A stretch of DNA of 63,094 nucleotides, the filler included, from Reticulomyxa filosa (Eukaryota > Protista > Foraminifera): the NCBI GenBank assembly GCA_000512085.1. It is 21 parts of 21 records of this genome, joined end to end, with 100 filler letters (N's around TTAATTAATTAA, not from the genome) between each part and the next. Parts side by side here need not be neighbours in the genome. Positions count along the whole stretch, not along the records: positions 10,991 to 20,624 come from ASPP01019760.1; 20 more parts are not named here. One strand, 5' to 3'. Positions within the stretch are counted from its first letter, which is position 1; every line of letters starts with the position of its first letter. The notes below the pieces were generated by a model. The model was not told where the DNA came from, ran no database searches, and was given only the letters and a program-made list of their open reading frames with translations. Positions 10,991 through 20,624 of the stretch are shown here, piece after piece. The position numbers and the translations under genes are program-made.

Positions 10991-11714
10991 TATTCATATT
11001 AATATTTGTATTCATATTGACATTGGTAGTGCTATGGGTCAAACCATTCGAATTATGTCCCATTGAAACCTCTCCTGAAAGCAAACTCATTTTGCTTTCT
11101 TTGATACTTTCCTCATTCGATAAATGTGGCTCTTTTGCTTTTAATGTCTCCGATGACTGTTGTGGTGGTCGTGCTATTGTCATACTTGACGACGATTCCA
11201 TACTAATATGCGATTGCTGGTTGGTCACGACGCGTTTCCAACTTTTCAGCTGGTCGAACACATCTGAAATAGTATTTAATGGTACCCACTTTGGTGCCTT
11301 ATTACTATTCCATAGGTAATGGTTCCCTTTCAACTCTCCACTTACATACATTTTTTTCAATTCACTCATCCCCACCGGTCCTGTTGCATTGCCAGTTTTG
11401 TTCACATAATACCAACCCTCTTCTAGGCCTTGTCTTCTTGTCACACTCTTATCCTCGTTCTCATTCGTCGCTAAATTCTTTCCAGAGTAGGATGTCTCGC
11501 CCAATTTCTTTTCACTCCATATTGTGGACGTGCTTTGTTGATTCGTCTGTATTTTTACTGTCTCTTTTTTATTGCTTATTAGGTAACTACTTTTCTGATC
11601 CTGCAGAAACTGTATTGCAAGATTTGTGCTATTGAATTTACTAGCTGCAGAAGTTGTAGCAGGCGTAGTGGTAGTAGTATTTATCATTCTTTGAGTAGAT
11701 GGTTGGTTGTTCAT
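10991..11714 (-). CDS. GYF_2 (DUF4339-type) domain protein, 3' partial
   Basis: WYYVNKTGNATGPVGMSELKKMYVSGELKGNHYLWNS...WVPL fits the WYY..GP....L...G.l...lW....W pattern. Confidence 0.75.
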
Positions 11715-14298
11715 GGAGCATGACAAATTTTTTTCTACACATTGCCCTAGCTGACGTTTCTAAATCGTATTACTTGTTTTGGTCCGGTTAACTATAACAT
11801 TGTTTTGAGTATTTTATTTCAATGTAATTCTTCTCTTTTTCATGGAAATTACTGCTAGAATTGTTGTGACACTAGAACGCATCTAATTTAAGAAAAAAAT
11901 AAAATATGATATACCAAAAAAATGAAAAGATATTATGAAAAAGATACAGAAATTTCCAAAGAATTTTACTTCGCAATCGATGATAATGTCTAGTCTCAAA
12001 AACTTGAAGTTATTCCAAACGACTTCAAACTTAATTTATAATTTGTTTCTCTTTTTAAACAATATGTTACTGTGTATTTAACACTAATCATCCACAGTAT
12101 AGTGGTGTTGCTCATATAACAACTGTTCATATTTTTCAGCACTATTCTAGTCATTTTAGGATAGTAATTTATCTTACTACGTATACTTTTAAGTATCTTT
12201 GATAGTGATGTTACTTATTTTTGTCATTTTTATATTAATGCAATTTACTTTTTGTTTTTGCATCATTTACAAACGCACGCTTGCATTGATTAGCACTATG
12301 CAACAATTGATCAATATGGGCATTGACTTTTTCTTCATTTAATCACTACAATGTTGTTGAAGACGACAAAAAAATCGATATTGTGTATCATTTTGTGATA
12401 AATAAAGATTAACTAGTAAATTTGTTGTCAATTATACGTAATCAAATGATTTTATGTTAAACTTTATTCTAAATAAGATGTAGAAAAGCTAAAATGCTAC
12501 ATTATGATGATAATCGATTTTCTATATGGAAAAACAAACATTCAACTTTATTTATTTTTTTTTAAATATAATTGTTTTTTTTTGTTGTATTTGCTTTTTA
12601 AAAGATCTAAATTTGTATTGTAATTTTTAAAGGGATTTGCGTCGGAATTATTGTCTGCATAAATAAATAAAAATTGTCTTTTTTATTTTTTGAATATTTT
12701 AATATATTGAGTTTGAGCATTAATGCTATTTTTTTACTTTTCCAAACAATATTCAAATAGCACACAAGTTGAAAGTCATGTACGTCACACAAGAAATCAC
12801 GAATTCAACCAAGAATAAATTTCCAATTATCAATTGAGTCAAAGAATATCAATTAATCAATATCTTTTTCTATGTTAGATTTGAATTTTTTGATTAAGAA
12901 ACTTTTTGAAATTTTCGAGACAATACGACTTCTTTTAAACGGGAAAAATGAGTTTGTAAATCATAAAAATTAGCGTAAGTTAACTAAAAGAAATTATTAG
13001 CGTAACGCTTGACAAGAGTAATTGCAATAAAAAAAATTTAATTGAGATGTTTGTAATCGCAGGAAAAAGTGAAATGTGTTTGAAACAAGTACTTTTTAAA
13101 TGTTGATTTTCTACAGAAAATCGATAATCTTATAAAGTAATATTTTCGTGTCATTGCTTTTGTAGTTCTATTTCCTAATGTAGAGAAGTGTTTGGACACT
13201 ATATCGATGAATTTCCTCAAAACAAAAAGTTAAATAAACTTGAAAAGGAGCCAGTCCAAAGAAAACAGAATAGAACAAAGAAAGTTTTGGAAAAGAATTA
13301 AGTGAAAAGTTCTTAGAAAAAGGGTTTCGACGTTCCACTTGAACTTTGTTAATCACAAGTAAGGCCTTACCATACACTAATTATATCTATGTAGGAAGTT
13401 GACCAGCCTGTCTTGACTGAAATGTTGAGTGTAATACGAATAGTTGCTCTTTAAGCAATCTTTCAAAAACAAATTAAATAAAGAAGAATATAAACAACGA
13501 CAATAACAACAAGAGAATAAGAGAGATTGGAAGAAAAGGTAAGTAAGTTGTTGTAAAAAAGGGATTTCCTGAGTTACGCAGGAACTTCACTTTACACTGT
13601 TAGAGCCTTACCCTACATCTTTATATTTTACATTGTATAACTTTTGAGCCAATCGGAAAATGAAAATCAATAATTGTTTTCATTTTTAAATACAATAAAA
13701 ACTGTTGTCACTTTCTATTTGTTGATTTTCAATTTACTAAAATTTGACAACTCATTGTTAATTTCAAATATCAATTGGCGAATTTTTAACAAGCCAAACA
13801 ATTTCTGATATTAAAAAAAATGTTTCAGCACTACCAATTGTAAATTTTTCTCAAACAAATTTTATGTTATTATAAGACTTTTTTTGTATTTTGAAAGTTG
13901 TGAGTGATAAAATTTTTTTTTGGAAGTTTTAGAACCTTGATTTTTTCATTTAAGAATGTAATTTTTTTTTGACATTATTGTAACATTATAAAGGCAAGTA
14001 ATAAATCATTTTTTGATTTGTTTAATTTACGCGGTCGATGATGAAATAGTCAGTTAGTCTTGTCGTGTCATGAGTTGTGAAAAGAGAGACTTTCTTTTTT
14101 CTTCATCACTAACCTTAAGAAGTCGTTTGACAAATTATACGCAAAGTTTTATTGCTAAGATATTTTAGCCAAAAGAACATAATAAGCATTTAATTTTCTT
14201 CATGAAACCAAAATCTTTAAAAATATCTACATATATGAAGAATTACAAGTGCTGTGATTTTTTTCTTCAGTTGATACTAACCAAAAAAGTATTGAACA

Positions 14299-17200
14299 CT
14301 ATATATCAGGTCCTTGCAGCAGCGCCGTAATTTCACTGGACATTTTCAAACGGCAAGCCATTTCAAAAGGTGTTTCTTTCATCTATAAATAATAGACAAA
14401 CATTCCATAAACTAATTTTTGTTAAAAAAAGCAGCCCCATACGTTAACATACCAACGCCGCATTTTTTGTTTTGAGCAAAACATTCCAACGATCAACAGG
14501 TATTCCTTTACGTAAGTAGTTCAAACTAATTTGTGCATAATTGTATTTGTTGAGCATGCACAAATGCAGGACGTTGCATCCTTCTATATCTGTACGATTG
14601 TCCTATGCCATTACGATCATAACTGCAAACTATGACAATAACAAACATATAAAAAAAGAAAAATGAACTCGTGTGACTCGTGTCCAAAAGTTTTCTGTTA
14701 ATTTTTCTGGGATCAATTGCGATAAGATGTCTTCATTAATTTCTGGTGAAAGCAACAACGCTTCCATTAGTGGCGTTTGGCCATGCTATGTGTAATGGTG
14801 AAATTGTTTTGTCTTTCCTTCGTTCAACATACAAGCCAAGAGGAAAAAATCTAAACTTTATCAACACGAACAAGTATTCTTTGCCATATCTCTCTGGGCA
14901 TGTATTTTTTCAATAAGGATAAACGATATGCCGTATTGGGAAATGACATATTGAACAGCAAATGCAGTATAGTTTTGCTAAACTGTCGTGCATCATCAAA
15001 CGAATGTATTTCTCTTCTTTTCTTTTTTGCAAAAGAAACACGTAACTCCAATTTCATTGCATTTTGTTTCCCAAAAAGTATTTATCTGTTCACAAGGTTT
15101 GGGGATAAGAGATTGAATCAAATATTCGTCTAAGTTAGGTTGAAAGAACACTGCACTCATCAATGGCGTCATTCCATCCTATTCAACAAAACCCGATCAC
15201 AATTTGCAAAAAAAAAAGGATGTGTCCATGTGAATGCTCACAGTGATTATGACAACAGAGAGATAATACTGACATCGGCGTCTTGTGTGAGGAGCAGCGA
15301 CTGCCATACATCTTCATTGACAATATTTTCTTTCAATAAAGCAATCAATTGGAAAGAAGGGACGAATGAGTTTCTTACAGCAAATGAAATAGGAGAAATT
15401 TTGCGCTATGTTCATTTGTGAGCAAACCTACCGACAATGCTACAAGAGTAAAAAAAATGTGTAAAATGAAAAGACAAGACTAAAAGCGAACATCAGTGAG
15501 AGAATGCCAGATAATTTCGGCAGCACTGGGATCAGATGGGACAAAGAGTTTGATGCAATCAACAGAAGGTTGTTTCCACAAAGCGTAGGTCAAAGGATAG
15601 GCATCGAACATGTCCCTTTGCACGAGTTGTTTCTGGACGACGTCGAGGGGAATAAAGCGACCACTTTGCAACAAGGCTTGAGCATAGCCAAAGCGGACTT
15701 GTGAGTTTAATGCCATTTGACATAGAAAGTTGCCACCGCTGATATTTCGGAAGGAAGAGATGAATTTGGACGTTCGAAAGGAAGCGGGATGAAGTAGCAT
15801 TAAGGCGGCGACATCACGAGAATGGAACGAGGCAATTTTAAGTTGTTCATCAAAGGACAGATCGGCCATGATGGACAGAGATTCTGATATGAAGGACTCT
15901 TGACGAGACAATTCGTAAAAGCCATGTCCTTTTTGTTTGAGCAGAGACATGGGTTGAAGTAAGAACTGCACTTCGGTGACAATACTTTCATTGTTCTGCA
16001 GGAACAGTACATTGATTTTAACATCGCGATAGTCTTGTGGAACCGTTAAGATCTTGTCATCGCTCTTGTCCATTCCAGAAAAGCCATTTTTGAACCGCAC
16101 AATGGCAAAACGCGTTTGCTGCTCCTCGATGGCATTTACAAAGTGTTCCAAACCATGCAACAAATAGCGGACATCTGTGAACGTCGCCTGACAGCGCAAT
16201 ACGTCAATAACATGCGCAGACTTTGGATAGTATTCGTTTTTGTATTCGACTTGCGCTTTCAACTTGCATCGCTCGTGAGTCTTAATTGGACCTTTTTCAA
16301 AGACACAGCCTTGGCAGGATTTGAAGATCTCTTGCATATACTGTTGATACGCAGCATCCATTTTGTGTGCTCGCGTCAAGAGTTCGTTTAAGTATACGTC
16401 AAAGTCGTATACGTGTTTGGGGTGGAATTCCACATCGTCGCTTTGCATTTGAATGGCGAGCAGCTCGCTCTCAGTCTTTTGGCATTTGAGTCCAAACTTG
16501 TCATTGTCTTGGCGACATTTCTTGTGTTTCAACGTGCTGTTCTTTGGTTCGTATCCAAATGCTATCAATCGTCGATACTCCTTTTCAAACTTTTCAATTT
16601 CTTGCTTTATTTCGATTTGAAATCTTTTCACTTCTTTGTCCGACTCCTCTTTGCACAGTTTTTTAATTTTATGCCATTGAATTGCTTTCTTCACCTTATT
16701 TTTTTTTTCCTGTTCTACTTCTCGAAGAGATAGCGATGATTGAATTATTGGCAAGGCTACTTCTTCGCTCTCCTTTTTTTCTTCGTTGCCATCGACTTTT
16801 TTTTTATCAACCACTTGAGTTGTGTCACCGAATTCGATATTTTTTTCCTCGTTTCCTTCGTCCGCCAGCTCGTCCATCCACATCAATATGTCTTGTGCTT
16901 CCAGTATGTGCTCTTCAATCCATTTCCAATTGCAAGTGCTTTGATGCAATGTATCGACATTCAACAGCGCTTTGCACGTCTGGTGCATCGCGTTGGTCAT
17001 CGCCGATTTATTGTAGAGCCAACAGAGGTTGAAGACATCACTGCTAATTTTTTTTTGATCTTTTATCATTGCAATTATTGCTTCGCTCAGCCCAGTCATA
17101 ATTATGTTAAAGTCTTCTTCTTTTTGTTTCTTCAAATAGCTCAACAACTCTTCGCATTTGCTCTGCTCATTCATTTGTGTCATTGCGTATTCCCTCGTCA

Positions 17201-17760
17201 TTTTCTCTTTTTCGTTCATAAATTTCATATGCATTAACACTTTTATCACTTGCGTGTTTTGAAATAATATCGCACAGTTCAACGCATCCTCAAACACTTG
17301 CTTGTGTTCATTGGGTCTTATTAACTCTGCTTCCAACAAGTAGCGTATACACTTTACATTATTTCCTGTTGACGGGCATACCATGTGGCTTAACAAATTC
17401 ATCTGTACGTATCCGCCGTTCACATGCACACAAAATATTACAAAGGGAAAAAGAAACAGGAAAGGTTATTTTCCACTTACTGGATGTTTATATCTATTGT
17501 ATTTAAATTTTTTCTCCCAAATTACTTCACTGCCATAACGCTCAAATATATCCACAAATAATGATTCTCGTTTATTTTCGGCGCATAAACACGCATACCA
17601 GCATATCTTGTCCTTAGCAAAAAAAAAAACAAAGCAACGTTTGAGAGTGTTAAGTTTGAGTAGGTCGAAATTTCAGTAAAACTGATTTACGAGCTCTGTC
17701 TACAATCGCGTCTATTTGACGAATGCGTTCTGCATGAACAGGATCAATCTCTGTTGTCAT
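14299..17760 (-). CDS. Ankyrin-like repeat protein with a central RelA/SpoT (SAS-like) nucleotidyltransferase domain; about 9 exons, apparently complete
   Basis: ATG at 17760 and TAG at 14299. Large exon about 15492-17402 carries GPIKTHERCKLK, IDVLRC, VRFKNGF, DYRDVKINV, TEVQF and HGFYELSR. Repeats include DGMTPLMSAV, HGQTPLMEAL and EGCNVLHL. Confidence 0.8.
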
Positions 17761-18476
17761 TTTTGTCTTTCAAGAAGTAACCTTTTCTTAATTTTGTGTT
17801 TTAAGTTTTTTTATGTTTAAAAAACAACAAAAAAAATTGAACGTATGAAAATTTGCATGGTTTCATGCATTTACATAGAATTTAGTGTAAAACATAACGT
17901 ATGTATTTATGTTTCCGAAGAGATAAATACTTGTTGCTCGAGCTAGCTTCGATATAAACGGACTCTCACTTAGAGCTCAGTGCGAAGGTCTTAGCAGTAG
18001 CATTTTTTTAAATAGTCAAGAAAATATGGAGATATGAAAAAATACATCACATCTTTTGCGCGTTCTAGTTTCGTCTATTGTTCATTAACTCAGTGACGGT
18101 CACTCAAATTTAAAATTAATTACAATACGTATTGATTTTTGATTTCAAAAAAGATTATTGGAGTGTCAAAAACGACATAAATTGATCAAAAGCAAAGAAA
18201 TTAGGTGCTTATTCAATGTCGTCCTAATCTAATTAGGTCAAAAACCGAAAAAATAAATATCACATTGCAAATTGCTTCTCTTTAAAAAAAAATTGTATTT
18301 TCTTAAATATTATTTAGAGCCTTATCATTTTATTATTGCCACAATCCCTTTAATAAAGTAGCTCCAAAAAAAAACATCATGACATTGTCCAGATAGATCG
18401 TTGCTGACGTTACTGGTCTTGATATAACATTTGTCTTTTTTCCCTTATTTTTCATTTTTTATGATTAAAATATGAC

Positions 18477-19923
18477 CTATGAGAACCCAAACTTTTTCTT
18501 TTCAGCTGGTTTCAAAATTTGAAAAGAGCACATAAGATTTTCATCCACGCTCATCATAGCTCCAGCGTTATCAAATTCTCCGCAGTAATTTGGTGCGCTG
18601 AACACAGTCACCAATTGTCTTCGCGAAAAAAATTCGTATCCATCTTCAACAACTTGATGTGCTCTTGCAATCAAATCCAAATCGTGTTTTTTCAAAAACT
18701 TGCTGACCACACTCGGTCCAAACGTATACGATACCTTATTATTGTTTTAAAAAGGGTAAATAACTTTTGGCGGAAGGCTCCAATCCCAAAACACTCCCTC
18801 CTCCCTTTTCCGTCAATGCAAGAATTATGGGAACGAAAGCGTTGGTGGCACTAAACTCCTCGGTCATTTTCTCCCCACTCTGGAACATCCTTGTCAGGAT
18901 CACTCCAAAGCAAGTCACATAATAAGCCACTGTCGGGCACGTCAGTAGGTCTCATCAATCGGCGAATTTGTTCCATCGATTTCAATTCTGGAGACAAGCC
19001 ACCGTGCATGCAAAATATTTTTTCATCAATTACTGCAGCCACTGGTAGACAATTGAAGCAATCAGTGAACGTTTTCCATAATTTTATTGTGTAACGCCGC
19101 TTGCACTCATCAAAAAATCCGTAAATTCGATTGATTGACGCACATTCATGGTTCCCTTTTTTTTTTTGTTGTTATTTGTTGTTGAGAAGGATGGTGACAG
19201 AGACGAAAACAAACAAAAAAAAAAACCAGCTGTTCTCACGGACTGGGCAATTGCAGATACGAAGGTTTAAAAAATTGTTTAACCGTCTTTTTTGGCCCCT
19301 TTCTTTCACGCACCCCCTCCCCTTTGATCACTTTTTTTGAGTGCTGGGGATGGTAATGCAATACATCTCCCAATTCCGTAATTTCGCAATTTCAGGAGTT
19401 GTTTGCCGTTTTTTATGATTTTTTTGAAAAATGAGGCCACCCTTTTTTAAAAAGATCAAAAGTATCAGAAACACCTACCCCGTAATAAAAAAAAATTCTC
19501 CGGGTATTTGTATTTGTAGGCCAATAACAGGCAAATAGTTTCCAAAGATTGTTTTCCTCGATCCACATAGTCCCCTAAAAACAAATAATTGGCTTGTGGA
19601 GGGAATTTTCCATATTCGAACAATCTTAATAAATCGTAGTATTGCCCATGGATGTCTCCCACTATTTTGATGGGTGCTTCCAATTCTATCAGTATTGGCT
19701 GTTCCAGAAAAATACGCCGACACATATCGCATATCTTAGTGATATCTTTCTCGCTCAATTCCACTTCTTTGCCTGGACGACTTCCTCTTACCTCCAACAA
19801 CTTGGAGATCATGTTGTCAACGTCGACATCTTCATTTACACGAGCTCCAGTACTTCCATTGCTGCTATTATTTATTTGTGCAGCAGTTTTGTCGTCAGAT
19901 GCACTTTTGCTTGGTAAAGACAT
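18477..19923 (-). CDS. PP1: Serine/threonine protein phosphatase 1 catalytic subunit; 3 exons
   Basis: GDIHGQ, GDYVDRG, LRGNHE (split by an intron), [31 protein letters not shown] and [13 protein letters not shown]; introns at about 19156-19479 and 18736-18855. Confidence 0.97.
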
Positions 19924-20586
19924 GATTTTTTGACAATTTTCTTCAAGGGGGGGAAAGAGCAAACTTTGTTTTCGTGTCTGTTGAGTACGAAGATAAGTGT
20001 AGTGCATTATTTCTTATATTTTTTCTTCCAGTACAGTTTCTTTAAAAAAGATTCTATAGATCACCAGGCACAATAACTTTCTTTTAAAAAACTACCTCTT
20101 AATCTTTAATAAAGTTAGTGCCCAAGTGCAGAAACGGAAAAACGAACAGCTAATGTTCAAAATTCTTATGACCGAATAAAAAAATTCTAATTGCGGAGAA
20201 AACTTTTGTAGTGCACTACCGAGCGGCTCTCAACAAAATATGTCTTGAATTGCGAAAAAAATAGCCTTTGGTCGCGCAATACTTTTTGTTTTGCTGTGAC
20301 CAATTGTTTCTACAGAGAAAAAAAAGCTTTCCTGCACAAAAAAGCAAAATGCGCAAAATGAAATTTTCTGGTGCTATGGTATATTCAAGACACCTTTTGG
20401 AAAAACTAAAATCAACACAAAAAAATTATAACATTGACAAGAAAAAAGAACTAAAAGCAATAAAATCCAAATCAGGTTTTCATTGTGTCGTTTTTTTGAG
20501 TTATAGTGGCATTACAAATAAAAATGAAAACCAATCAAGAAACTACAAACAAATTAATAAAACAAACAAAATAAATGTATAAACAA

Positions 20587-20624
<38 letters not shown>

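What the first reader, a model, noticed from the sequence alone, without database searches (positions are those of the whole stretch)
14299..17760. Eukaryotic alarmone-synthetase-like (RelA/SpoT SAS) enzyme embedded between ankyrin-like repeats: candidate nucleotide-signalling or immune system
Seen: the segment at about 15900-16430 contains, in order, PIKTHERCKLK, DVLRC, VRFKNGF, DYRDVKIN, EVQF and HGFYELSR. Established: these correspond to the RSH synthetase motifs (RxKSxxSxxxK, DxxGxR, GYRSxH, EIQ, HxxYK). The DxxR, KNxF and HxxYExxR variants resemble stand-alone small alarmone synthetases and toxSAS enzymes such as Tas1/Apk ((p)ppApp) more than the long plastid RSH proteins. No HD hydrolase or TGS/ACT domain is visible. 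The gene has spliceosomal introns and lies beside PP1 on the same contig, so it is host nuclear DNA. The catalytic D and E are retained. Inference: a repeat-sensor-gated enzyme making (p)ppGpp or (p)ppApp, or modifying tRNA, in a heterotrophic protist, analogous to sensor-effector immune fusions.
Basis: partly seen in the sequence, partly recalled or inferred. Interest (0 to 1): 0.88.

Follow-up and report, generated by a model that had tools for sequence, protein, structure and literature searches.

The report
Divergent alarmone-synthetase-like enzyme in a foraminifer
A nuclear gene of the amoeboid protist Reticulomyxa filosa carries, between ankyrin-type repeats, a domain predicted with high confidence to fold like the bacterial enzymes that make the stress signal (p)ppGpp, and it belongs to a large unannotated protist family that sequence-profile surveys would have missed.

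Summary
All six motif strings lie in one 649-codon minus-strand ORF (15480-17429), between bases 16289 and 15903. The ORF is the big exon of a nine-exon GT-AG gene running from ATG 17760 to TAG 14299. The contig is Reticulomyxa filosa, with an intron-bearing PP1 gene next door.

Pfam, NCBIfam and PDB sequence or profile searches do not recognise the domain. A high-confidence AlphaFold model (pLDDT 89.8) does. All 50 best Foldseek PDB hits are RelA/SpoT-type synthetases. An exhaustive structural scan puts nine such enzymes on top (Z 13.7 to 9.4), above other Pol-beta nucleotidyltransferases (9.3 or less).

The motifs are collinear with E. coli RelA. The Asp, the Glu and the ATP-binding basic residues are invariant across 58 homologues at about 30% identity. 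The G-loop is remodelled, so the acceptor is unknown.

The family is large: 1165 representatives. The members looked up are foraminiferal, with at least 18 R. filosa paralogues, and 29 of 34 long members carry ankyrin repeats.

The fold and the retained catalytic site are supported. The product and the immune-sensor idea are untested. No RNA run was listed for this gene.

The parts
17683..17760 (-). Exon 1 (ATG at 17760; 26 codons; donor GT at 17682-17681)
   Evidence: Sequence reading; weak tblastn of paralogue P0008 residues 55-72 to 17730-17677
17481..17612 (-). Exon 2 (44 codons; acceptor AG at 17614-17613, donor GTAAGT at 17480)
   Evidence: P0002, P0008 and P0009 align from 17615 onward
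15492..17402 (-). Exon 3, the large exon (637 codons). It holds an N-terminal ankyrin-like repeat, a helical region, a charged linker or coiled coil, a conserved RQD motif and the RSH-like domain.
   Evidence: ORF 15480..17429; 100% identical to GenBank-derived model P0001; AG at 17404-17403, donor GT at 15491
17229..17366 (-). Ankyrin-like repeat, below Pfam threshold
   Evidence: Pfam Ank_2 E 0.009 and Ank_4 E 0.011 on ORF residues 22-67. The equivalent region of paralogue P0006 passes threshold.
16506..16517 (-). Conserved CRQD motif about 25 residues upstream of the modelled domain (RQD is invariant or near-invariant in 34 full-length relatives)
15825..16442 (-). RelA/SpoT-synthetase-like (SYNTH-fold) domain, P0001 residues 315-520
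   Evidence: AF2 models; Foldseek and VIA-align top hits are all RSH synthetases; coordinates
16203..16205 (-). Codon of the invariant Asp (P0001 D394, domain D80), at the start of strand beta2; counterpart of E. coli RelA D275
15972..15974 (-). Codon of the invariant Glu (P0001 E471, domain E157), on strand beta5 in the GE[VIM]QFLL motif; counterpart of RelA E335
15274..15405 (-). Exon 4 (44 codons; ISFAVRNSF...LLKENIVNEDVWQSLLLTQDAD)
   Evidence: Frame analysis; tblastn of P0008, P0003, P0002 and P0007
15047..15178 (-). Exon 5, ankyrin-like 'G.TPLM.A' repeat (an alternative donor would end it at 15042)
   Evidence: The homologous stretch of P0003 carries Pfam Ank hits.
14857..14982 (-). Exon 6, ankyrin-like '..LHLL' repeat (an alternative acceptor would start it at 14977)
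14669..14785 (-). Exon 7, second 'G.TPLM.A' repeat (an alternative donor would end it at 14678)
14453..14602 (-). Exon 8, second '..LHL' repeat
14299..14382 (-). Exon 9 with stop codon TAG at 14301-14299

Best explanation
This is an intact, intron-bearing nuclear gene of Reticulomyxa filosa, of roughly 950 codons. Its central domain is a very divergent homologue of the RelA/SpoT (RSH) synthetase domain. The most likely mechanism has three parts. The basic helix motif (G-P-x-K-x3-R-x3-K) together with R83, R116 and K118 holds ATP. The invariant Asp on beta2 and Glu on beta5 hold Mg2+. The beta,gamma-pyrophosphate of ATP is then transferred to a hydroxyl of an acceptor, most probably the 3'-OH of a purine nucleotide, giving an alarmone-type product. 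The acceptor-binding 'G-loop' (PKxNGYxSxH in RSH) is replaced by a variable loop followed by Y-x-D-x-K-x-N, so the acceptor need not be GDP or GTP. The ankyrin repeats on both sides, and the conserved helical N-terminal module, are inferred to tether or regulate the enzyme through protein-protein contacts. Shown here: the gene structure, the fold, motif collinearity, residue invariance, and the size and architecture of the family. Inferred: catalytic activity, the pyrophosphate-transfer chemistry, the acceptor, and regulation by the repeats.
For: Fold: the AF2 model from 58 sequences has pLDDT 89.8 and pTM 0.82. The 50 best Foldseek PDB hits are all RSH synthetases, with best E 1.5e-7. An exhaustive VIA-align scan of 48,161 chains gives EAS 8vx3 at Z 13.7 (159 residues aligned, 3.2 A), SAS2 12.9, SAS1 12.3, RelP 12.2, Rel 11.9, CapRel 11.2, SpoT 10.6, Tas1 10.5 and Rel 9.4. 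Other nucleotidyltransferases follow at 9.3 or below. An independent 8-sequence model gave the same ranking. ESM Atlas structural neighbours include bacterial clusters carrying PF04607. The strand and helix order matches the SAS topology, with D80 at beta2 and E157 on beta5. The motifs are collinear with E. coli RelA: G-x-x-K then +8 to K with identical spacing, D394~D275, R430-x-K-N~E306-x-D-D (the RxKD position), Y452~Y319, E471~E335, and H487-x-x-Y~H354-x-x-Y. Those residues are invariant or at least 90% conserved in 58 homologues at about 30% identity. One of the 58 members weakly hits the NCBIfam RelP/YjbM model (E 0.0053). The gene looks real and eukaryotic: nine in-frame GT-AG exons supported by paralogues, PP1 and GYF genes on the same contig, and relatives present in foraminiferal transcriptomes from Nonionella, Bolivina and MMETSP.
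Against: No sequence method links the domain to RSH. Pfam RelA_SpoT gives no hit on this protein or on 58 relatives. PDB phmmer and profile searches find nothing. hhalign and hmmsearch against E. coli RelA, and against a profile built only from RelA sequences, find nothing. That profile was of low diversity, so those results are inconclusive. The fold evidence rests on predicted models only. The G-loop, the DxxGxR motif (here DxxR) and the EIQIRT tail (here E[VIM]QFLL) all differ from canonical enzymes. No activity data exist. No RNA run was listed for this gene, so its own splicing and expression are unverified. No hydrolase partner was sought or found.
Confidence: 0.72

Rival explanations
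1. The fold and chemistry are the same, but the acceptor is the 3' end of tRNA or another RNA, as in the toxSAS enzymes CapRel, FaRel2 and PhRel2. The protein would then be a repeat-gated translation-shutdown or immune effector, activated when the ankyrin repeats bind a trigger.
For: CapRel is among the top structural matches (Z 11.2; Z 10.8 and 10.4). The nucleotide-acceptor G-loop is remodelled. The family is greatly expanded with lineage-specific bursts: at least 18 R. filosa paralogues, and 7 sampled ones form one clade with SH-aLRT 99. Members are fused to varied repeat modules: Ank, TPR, WD40/coronin and RCC1. This pattern is reminiscent of sensor-effector families.
Against: CapRel, Tas1 and FaRel (Z 6.3) score below the housekeeping-type SAS, EAS and Rel enzymes. 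No PADLOC defence model matches. No antitoxin-like or STAND NTPase module was found. Foraminifera expand many gene families, so expansion alone is weak evidence. Nothing here tests RNA binding.
Confidence: 0.13
2. The domain is a Pol-beta-superfamily nucleotidyltransferase that transfers a nucleotidyl group (adenylyl or uridylyl transfer, RNA tailing, or cGAS-like cyclic nucleotide synthesis) rather than pyrophosphate.
For: TdT, Pol mu and lambda, GLD-2, TUTases, CdnE and cGLR appear at Z 7-9.3. One member weakly hits the ANT(4')-I model (E 0.0093). Sequence methods do not assign the domain to RSH.
Against: All RSH synthetases rank above every classical nucleotidyltransferase, and they cover more residues (about 150-159 aligned against about 100-125). 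The classical hG[GS] plus DxD/DxE carboxylate pair is absent: strand beta2 carries the single Asp in DxxR, as in RSH (DxxGxR). RSH-specific features are present: the basic K-x3-[SR]-x3-K helix, the RxK[DN] motif, E-x-Q and H-x-x-Y.
Confidence: 0.07
3. The domain is a catalytically dead pseudoenzyme that serves as a nucleotide-binding or scaffolding module within ankyrin-repeat proteins.
For: The canonical acceptor loop is lost. Some paralogues are visibly degenerate. P0008 lacks Y138, D140, H173 and Y176, and the P0004 model lacks the Q-F-L-L segment.
Against: D80, E157 and the whole set of basic ATP-binding residues are invariant across 58 sequences at about 30% identity. Such conservation is hard to explain without catalysis. 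The window's own copy has every conserved residue.
Confidence: 0.06
4. The finding is an artefact: chance motifs, a mis-assembled piece, or bacterial or endosymbiont contamination rather than a host gene.
For: No RNA run was listed for this locus. The GenBank model is only a 634-aa fragment called a hypothetical protein.
Against: The gene has nine GT-AG introns of 64-95 nt and an AT-rich eukaryotic context, with intron-bearing PP1 and GYF genes on the same contig. There are 1165 family representatives. Every member whose source was looked up is foraminiferal (genome or transcriptome) or from environmental assemblies. No relatives were found in phage records or viral contigs.
Confidence: 0.02

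Closest known systems
Small alarmone synthetases RelQ/SAS1 and RelP/SAS2 (Bacillus, Staphylococcus; PDB 5ded, 6fgk, 6ewz)
   Same: They share the single-domain SYNTH fold (Z 12.2-12.9, about 150 residues aligned at about 3 A). They share the topology, the basic ATP-binding helix, the single Asp on beta2, an RxKD-like RxKN motif, the E-x-Q strand and the H-x-x-Y helix.
   Different: Sequence identity is only 11-15%, with no HMM-level match. The G-loop PKxNGYxSxH is replaced by a variable loop plus YxDxKxN. DxxGxR becomes DxxR. The protein is eukaryotic, intron-bearing and embedded in a roughly 950-residue ankyrin-repeat protein instead of being a free homotetramer-forming domain.
Exported alarmone synthetase SaEAS of Streptomyces albidoflavus (PDB 8vx3; PMC12691689)
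   Same: It is the best structural match (Z 13.7, 159 residues aligned, rmsd 3.2 A; TM 0.57-0.60).
   Different: [quoted passage not shown] The R. filosa protein has no evident signal peptide by reading, and it has flanking repeats. Identity is about 12-13%.
Tas1/Apk1 (p)ppApp-synthetase toxin (PDB 6ox6) and the toxSAS tRNA pyrophosphokinases CapRel and FaRel (PDB 7ztb, 9erv, 8pu1)
   Same: They share the fold (Tas1 Z 10.5 with the highest identity, 20%; CapRel Z 11.2). They also share the concept of a SYNTH domain coupled to a regulatory or sensor module.
   Different: They do not rank above ordinary SAS and Rel enzymes, and FaRel scores only Z 6.3. The protein has no immunity or antitoxin partner, no pseudo-ZFD and no secretion-system context. 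No PADLOC model hits it.
Eukaryotic RSH proteins known so far: plant and algal plastid RSH1-4, Mesh1 hydrolase, and 'divRel'/FunRel SAS of fungi, Dictyostelium and diatoms (PMC3153485; bioRxiv 10.1101/575399)
   Same: These are also eukaryote-encoded members of the RSH superfamily. The divRel and FunRel proteins likewise have a synthetase domain without a hydrolase.
   Different: Those proteins were found with RSH HMMs and are recognisable by sequence. This family is not hit by Pfam RelA_SpoT, so HMM-based censuses would have missed it. It has no HD, TGS, ACT or EF-hand domain, and it has its own architecture (Ank - helical module - SYNTH-like - Ank).

Membership tests
RSH superfamily, synthetase (SYNTH, Pfam PF04607 RelA_SpoT) domain | Significant match to the RelA_SpoT profile (Pfam gathering threshold) | tested here: not met
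   No PF04607 hit at E up to 1 on the 649-aa ORF or on any of 58 family domains. PDB sequence and profile searches were empty. hhalign and hmmsearch against RelA were empty. One of 58 members gives a weak NCBIfam RelP/YjbM hit, E 0.0053.
RSH superfamily, synthetase (SYNTH) domain | SYNTH fold: N-terminal helices, a five-stranded mixed sheet and a C-terminal helix, closest to solved RSH synthetases | tested here: met
   Model with pLDDT 89.8. Top 50 Foldseek hits are all RSH synthetases. In the exhaustive scan the top nine chains are RSH at Z 13.7-9.4, and other nucleotidyltransferases score 9.3 or below. The evidence rests on predicted structure only.
RSH superfamily, synthetase (SYNTH) domain | ATP-binding basic motif G-R-x-K-x3-S-x3-K on the helix after beta1 | tested here: met
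   G-P-x-K-x3-R-x3-K, with spacing identical to RelA G251, K254 and K262. G51, K54, R58 and K62 are invariant or near-invariant. It is a variant form: P replaces R and R replaces S.
RSH superfamily, synthetase (SYNTH) domain | Catalytic Asp on beta2 (DxxGxR) and catalytic Glu on beta5 (E[IV]Q) | tested here: met
   D80-x-x-R83 and G-E157-x-Q159 are invariant in 58 sequences and sit on the predicted beta2 and beta5 strands. The Arg is at +3 rather than +5.
RSH superfamily, synthetase (SYNTH) domain | Acceptor (guanine) binding G-loop PKxNGYxSxH | tested here: not met
   It is replaced by a variable, often low-complexity loop followed by Y138-x-D140-x-K142-x-N144. Only the Tyr is kept.
RSH superfamily, synthetase (SYNTH) domain | ATP:nucleotide 3'-pyrophosphotransferase activity | not testable with these tools
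   Needs biochemistry.
Long RSH (Rel/RelA/SpoT, plant RSH) | HD hydrolase domain N-terminal, and TGS/ACT (or EF-hand) domains C-terminal, to SYNTH | tested here: not met
   No HD_4, TGS or ACT hit in the ORF, in the other exons or in 34 long relatives.
toxSAS / fused toxin-antitoxin CapRel-type defence proteins | Adjacent or fused antitoxin (pseudo-ZFD, Panacea and similar) and a defence-island or prophage context; tRNA 3'-CCA pyrophosphorylation | tested here: not met
   The context is a eukaryotic chromosome with PP1 and GYF neighbours. No PADLOC model is hit. The flanks are ankyrin repeats instead. Activity on tRNA was not testable.
Ankyrin-repeat proteins | Pfam Ank-family match above threshold | tested here: inconclusive
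   The window's own gene is below threshold (Ank_2 16.9 bits against 27.3), and single exons give no hit. Paralogues P0003 and P0006 and 29 of 34 long relatives are above threshold, on both sides of the domain.
Classical Pol-beta nucleotidyltransferases (TENT, PolX, cGAS/CD-NTase) | hG[GS] motif plus paired carboxylates [DE]h[DE]h on beta2 and a third carboxylate | tested here: not met
   Strand beta2 reads I-D-V-L-R-C, with a single acidic residue, and no G[GS] helix-cap motif is present. These families score lower structurally.

The most novel reading that the evidence does not exclude
Foraminifera, and probably ciliates and diatoms, possess a large and previously unrecognised clade of active RSH-fold pyrophosphokinases. 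These enzymes are wired to ankyrin, TPR, WD40 or RCC1 modules and make alarmone-type nucleotides, or pyrophosphorylate RNA ends, in the eukaryotic cytosol. That would be a eukaryotic alarmone or immune-type signalling system invisible to HMM-based RSH censuses. It would also be a precedent for where to look for the missing ppGpp synthetase of other eukaryotes.
Probability: 0.35. Interest if true: 0.9.

Novelty: new variant of a known kind. Interest (0 to 1): 0.72.

Why it matters
RSH synthetases are regarded as bacterial and plastid enzymes. Outside plastids, the only eukaryotic synthetases reported are sporadic HMM-detectable 'divRel'/FunRel proteins (PMC3153485). ppGpp has been measured in animals that have the hydrolase Mesh1 but no known synthetase (PMC7666150, PMC9894426).

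The family found here has more than a thousand 50%-identity representatives and keeps the RSH catalytic constellation, yet it lies below HMM detection. That shows sequence-based censuses can miss whole eukaryotic clades of this fold. If the enzymes are active, they would define a nucleotide-signalling system in a major protist lineage, with a modular layout (repeat - enzyme - repeat) that invites tests of regulated or sensor-gated alarmone production. The family also gives a new profile with which to search other eukaryotes. If the domain proves inactive, or uses another chemistry, it is still a large unannotated domain family that deserves a database entry.

Tried and rejected
1. Direct sequence recognition failed. 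This covers Pfam and NCBIfam on the ORF, PDB phmmer, and PDB profile searches with 8- and 58-sequence alignments, whose only hits were spurious neuraminidase matches at E of about 0.3-1.
2. Profile-profile tests found nothing. I ran hhalign of the 58-sequence alignment against the E. coli RelA synthetase region and against a 59-row profile built only from RelA sequences, in global and local modes. I also ran hmmsearch --max against RelA. The database search used to build that profile returned only RelA fragments, so the profile was too narrow. I count these results as inconclusive, not negative.
3. PHROGs gave only an unannotated family (phrog_37685, 7 of 58 members, best E 0.0024). PADLOC gave nothing relevant.
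4. The search for relatives outside eukaryotes gave little. The viral-contig scan gave pattern matches but no confirmed relative. tblastn against phage records gave no match. A word-based database search with the family alignment added only two proteins.
5. RNA evidence: no RNA run was listed.
7. My first hand reading of exon 4 used the wrong frame. The three-frame analysis corrected it.
8. Exons were searched one by one by reference, which is too short for ankyrin detection.
Full report
**Where the piece comes from, and the gene**

The usable piece (10991-20624) is AT-rich, with 23-45% GC. The strings map to window 16289-15903.

The ORF's product is 100% identical to a database protein of 634 aa from a 9634-bp contig. 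All close relatives are 'hypothetical protein RFI_...' entries of Reticulomyxa filosa.

I read both flanks on the minus strand, mapped five paralogues by tblastn and translated the three frames. This gives nine exons with canonical GT-AG borders, all in phase:

| Exon | Window coordinates (minus strand) |
|---|---|
| E1 | 17760-17683 |
| E2 | 17612-17481 |
| E3 | 17402-15492 |
| E4 | 15405-15274 |
| E5 | 15178-15047 (or 15042) |
| E6 | 14982 (or 14977)-14857 |
| E7 | 14785-14669 (or 14678) |
| E8 | 14602-14453 |
| E9 | 14382-14302, then TAG at 14301-14299 |

Introns are 64-95 nt. The public 634-aa model is therefore truncated at both ends. Exons were analysed one at a time by reference.

The neighbours are eukaryotic genes. 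A PP1-type phosphatase, split by introns, lies at 18477-20007 (STPPase_N E 1.2e-17; Metallophos). A GYF-domain gene is cut by the piece edge at or below 11726.

No RNA run was listed for the locus, so splicing and expression of this copy are not directly verified. Relatives are present in the transcriptomes of the foraminifera Nonionella stella and Bolivina argentea, and in MMETSP.

**Is the central domain an RSH synthetase?**

Sequence methods do not recognise it. Pfam finds only sub-threshold ankyrin matches in the ORF. NCBIfam finds nothing meaningful. PDB phmmer and two profile searches find nothing. Pfam RelA_SpoT hits none of 58 family members. hhalign and hmmsearch against E. coli RelA and a profile built only from RelA sequences are empty. 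That profile was narrow, so those last results are inconclusive. The only sequence-level hint is one of 58 members hitting the NCBIfam RelP/YjbM model at E 0.0053. With 58 queries this is not significant on its own.

Structure prediction recognises it clearly.
- An 8-sequence model (pLDDT 71) already gave small alarmone synthetases as the 42 best Foldseek PDB hits, with Z 12.2 to RelQ/SAS1 and to SaEAS (8vx3).
- A 58-sequence model reached pLDDT 89.8 and pTM 0.82.
- With that second model, all 50 best Foldseek hits are RSH synthetases: SAS1, SAS2/RelP, EAS, Rel, RelA, SpoT and Tas1. The best E-value is 1.5e-7.
- An exhaustive VIA-align scan that does not depend on Foldseek (48,161 chains) gave the ranking below.

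| Chain | Z |
|---|---|
| SaEAS 8vx3 (159 aligned, 3.2 A) | 13.7 |
| SAS2 | 12.9 |
| SAS1 | 12.3 |
| RelP | 12.2 |
| Rel | 11.9 |
| CapRel | 11.2 |
| SpoT | 10.6 |
| Tas1 (20% identity) | 10.5 |
| Rel (second entry) | 9.4 |
| TdT | 9.3 |
| GLD-2 | 8.9 |
| RsfS, TUTases, Pol beta, CD-NTases | lower |

ESM Atlas neighbours by shape include bacterial clusters carrying PF04607.

The predicted element order is a long helix, beta1, a helix, beta2, a helix, beta3, a loop, beta4, beta5 and a final helix. This is the SAS topology. It places D80 at the start of beta2 and E157 on beta5.

**Motif register**

Against E. coli RelA (sequence, positions), the motifs are collinear.

| E. coli RelA | R. filosa (P0001 numbering) |
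|---|---|
| G251-R-P-K254 ... K262 | G365-P-I-K368 ... K376 (same +3 and +8 spacing) |
| D275 (FDVRAVR) | D394 (IDVLRC) |
| E306-F-D-D (the position that is RxKD in bifunctional Rel and SAS; established knowledge, charge-reversal motif) | R430-F-K-N |
| Y319 in NGYQSIH | Y452 in DYRDVKIN |
| E335-I-Q | E471-V-Q |
| H354-W-K-Y | H487-G-F-Y |

RelA G251, D275 and E335 are residues whose mutation is known to abolish synthesis. This comes from my own knowledge of the RelA literature and was not checked here.

In 58 homologues averaging about 30% identity, K62, D80, R83, R116, K118, N119, N144 and E157 are invariant. P52, K54, R58, Y138, D140, K142, Q159, H173, Y176 and R180 are at least 90% conserved (and for a 10-sequence subset).

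The ATP-binding and metal-binding constellation is therefore under strong constraint, which argues for an active enzyme. Three things are not conserved relative to RSH:
- The acceptor G-loop PKxNGYxSxH becomes a variable, often N/Q/S-rich loop followed by YxDxKxN.
- The Arg after the Asp sits at +3 rather than +5.
- The IRT tail after E-x-Q is absent.

The classical Pol-beta signature (G[GS] plus paired carboxylates) is absent.

**The family**

A profile of eight R. filosa domains, searched against 1.84 billion representatives, found 1165 proteins at E of 1e-3 or better, 538 at 1e-10 and 135 at 1e-30. Of the thirty top hits looked up:
- Eight are further R. filosa gene models (with, at least 18 distinct paralogues).
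- Eight are from Nonionella stella or Bolivina argentea.
- The rest are MMETSP transcripts or marine metagenome or metatranscriptome assemblies.

ESM Atlas suggests further relatives in ciliates and diatoms, some fused to ankyrin or TPR repeats. I did not verify these by sequence.

Of 34 long members, 29 carry significant ankyrin repeats. Three carry RCC1 repeats. One is a coronin-type WD40 fusion. ZZ and C1 fingers occur once each. In P0030 and P0123 the ankyrin repeats lie on both sides of the domain.

An upstream W-rich helical module and an RQD motif are also conserved. The conserved unit is therefore larger than the catalytic domain.

In a quick ML tree of the 58 domains, seven R. filosa paralogues form one clade (SH-aLRT 99). 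Nonionella sequences fall in at least three separate lineages. This points to old paralogy plus lineage-specific expansion.

**Ankyrin claim for this gene**

The N-terminal match is below threshold, and the C-terminal exons are individually too short to score. Those exons do show an alternating 'G.TPLM.A...' / '..LHL...' pattern. They are homologous to the stretch of paralogue P0003 that passes the Ank_2 threshold. 'Ankyrin-like' is therefore reasonable, but for this copy it rests on homology.

**Mechanism**

The best-supported reading is an ATP-dependent pyrophosphokinase of the RSH type. Its acceptor site has been rebuilt, and it is tethered or regulated by ankyrin repeats and the N-terminal module. 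A 3'-pyrophosphorylated purine nucleotide is the default expectation, because the stacking Tyr is kept. An RNA or tRNA 3' end (toxSAS-like) or another hydroxyl acceptor cannot be excluded.

The immune-sensor analogy has only circumstantial support: family expansion and variable repeat fusions. There is no positive evidence for it. No PADLOC model matches, and no viral or phage relatives were found.

**Prior knowledge**

HMM-based censuses of the RSH superfamily list only plant and algal RSH, Mesh1, and sporadic divRel/FunRel SAS in fungi, Dictyostelium and diatoms (PMC3153485; bioRxiv 10.1101/575399). Neither paper mentions ankyrin fusions. Full-text searches combining alarmone synthetase or RelA-SpoT terms with ankyrin, protists or Foraminifera returned nothing relevant. 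That library does not cover subscription journals, so prior description cannot be excluded.

**Verdict**

The fold-level interpretation is strongly supported by predicted structure, motif collinearity and residue invariance. Membership of Pfam RelA_SpoT is not met at sequence level. The chemistry, the product and the biological role are inferred. I rate this as a new, highly divergent eukaryotic variant of a known enzyme kind, of considerable interest to the alarmone field.

Noticed in passing
window 18477-20007 (minus strand): A PP1-type serine/threonine phosphatase catalytic-subunit gene split by introns. Exon ORFs lie at 19465-20007, 18851-19042 and 18477-18710, with Pfam STPPase_N E 1.2e-17 and Metallophos hits. 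The exon between about 19042 and 19465 was not resolved.
   Followed up: partly
window 10991-11726 (minus strand): An ORF with a GYF domain (Pfam GYF_2 E 4.7e-7), preceded by a Thr/Ser/Asn-rich low-complexity region. It is cut off by the edge of the piece.
   Followed up: partly
window 14299-17760 compared with database protein P0001: The public gene model for this locus (634 aa, starting MVCPSTG and ending DVRF) corresponds only to the big exon. It appears to lack two upstream and six downstream exons. Several paralogue models (P0002, P0003, P0008) seem to read through introns, for example runs of F or K.
   Followed up: partly
Paralogues P0003, P0004, P0006 and P0007, loop between beta3 and beta4 (alignment A1, columns about 131-165): The loop that replaces the RSH G-loop is highly variable in length and is filled with N/Q/S/D low-complexity sequence in some R. 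filosa paralogues (up to about 50 residues in P0007). It is short in the window's copy and in Nonionella.
   Followed up: no
Paralogues P0008 and P0004 (alignment A1): P0008 has lost Y138, D140, H173 and Y176 while keeping D80 and E157. The P0004 model lacks the QFLL... segment after the Glu. These may be degenerate paralogues or annotation errors.
   Followed up: no
Family member P0039 (Nonionella stella, 1218 aa), and three RCC1-bearing members of alignment A3: P0039 is a coronin-type fusion: an N-terminus of DUF1899, WD40 and WD40_4, then ankyrin, then the RSH-like domain. Three other long members carry RCC1 repeats. These hint at links to the cytoskeleton or small-GTPase pathways.
   Followed up: no
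Alignment A2 against PHROGs: Seven of 58 family domains weakly hit the unannotated phage family phrog_37685 (best E 0.0024). I could not determine what that family is.
   Followed up: no
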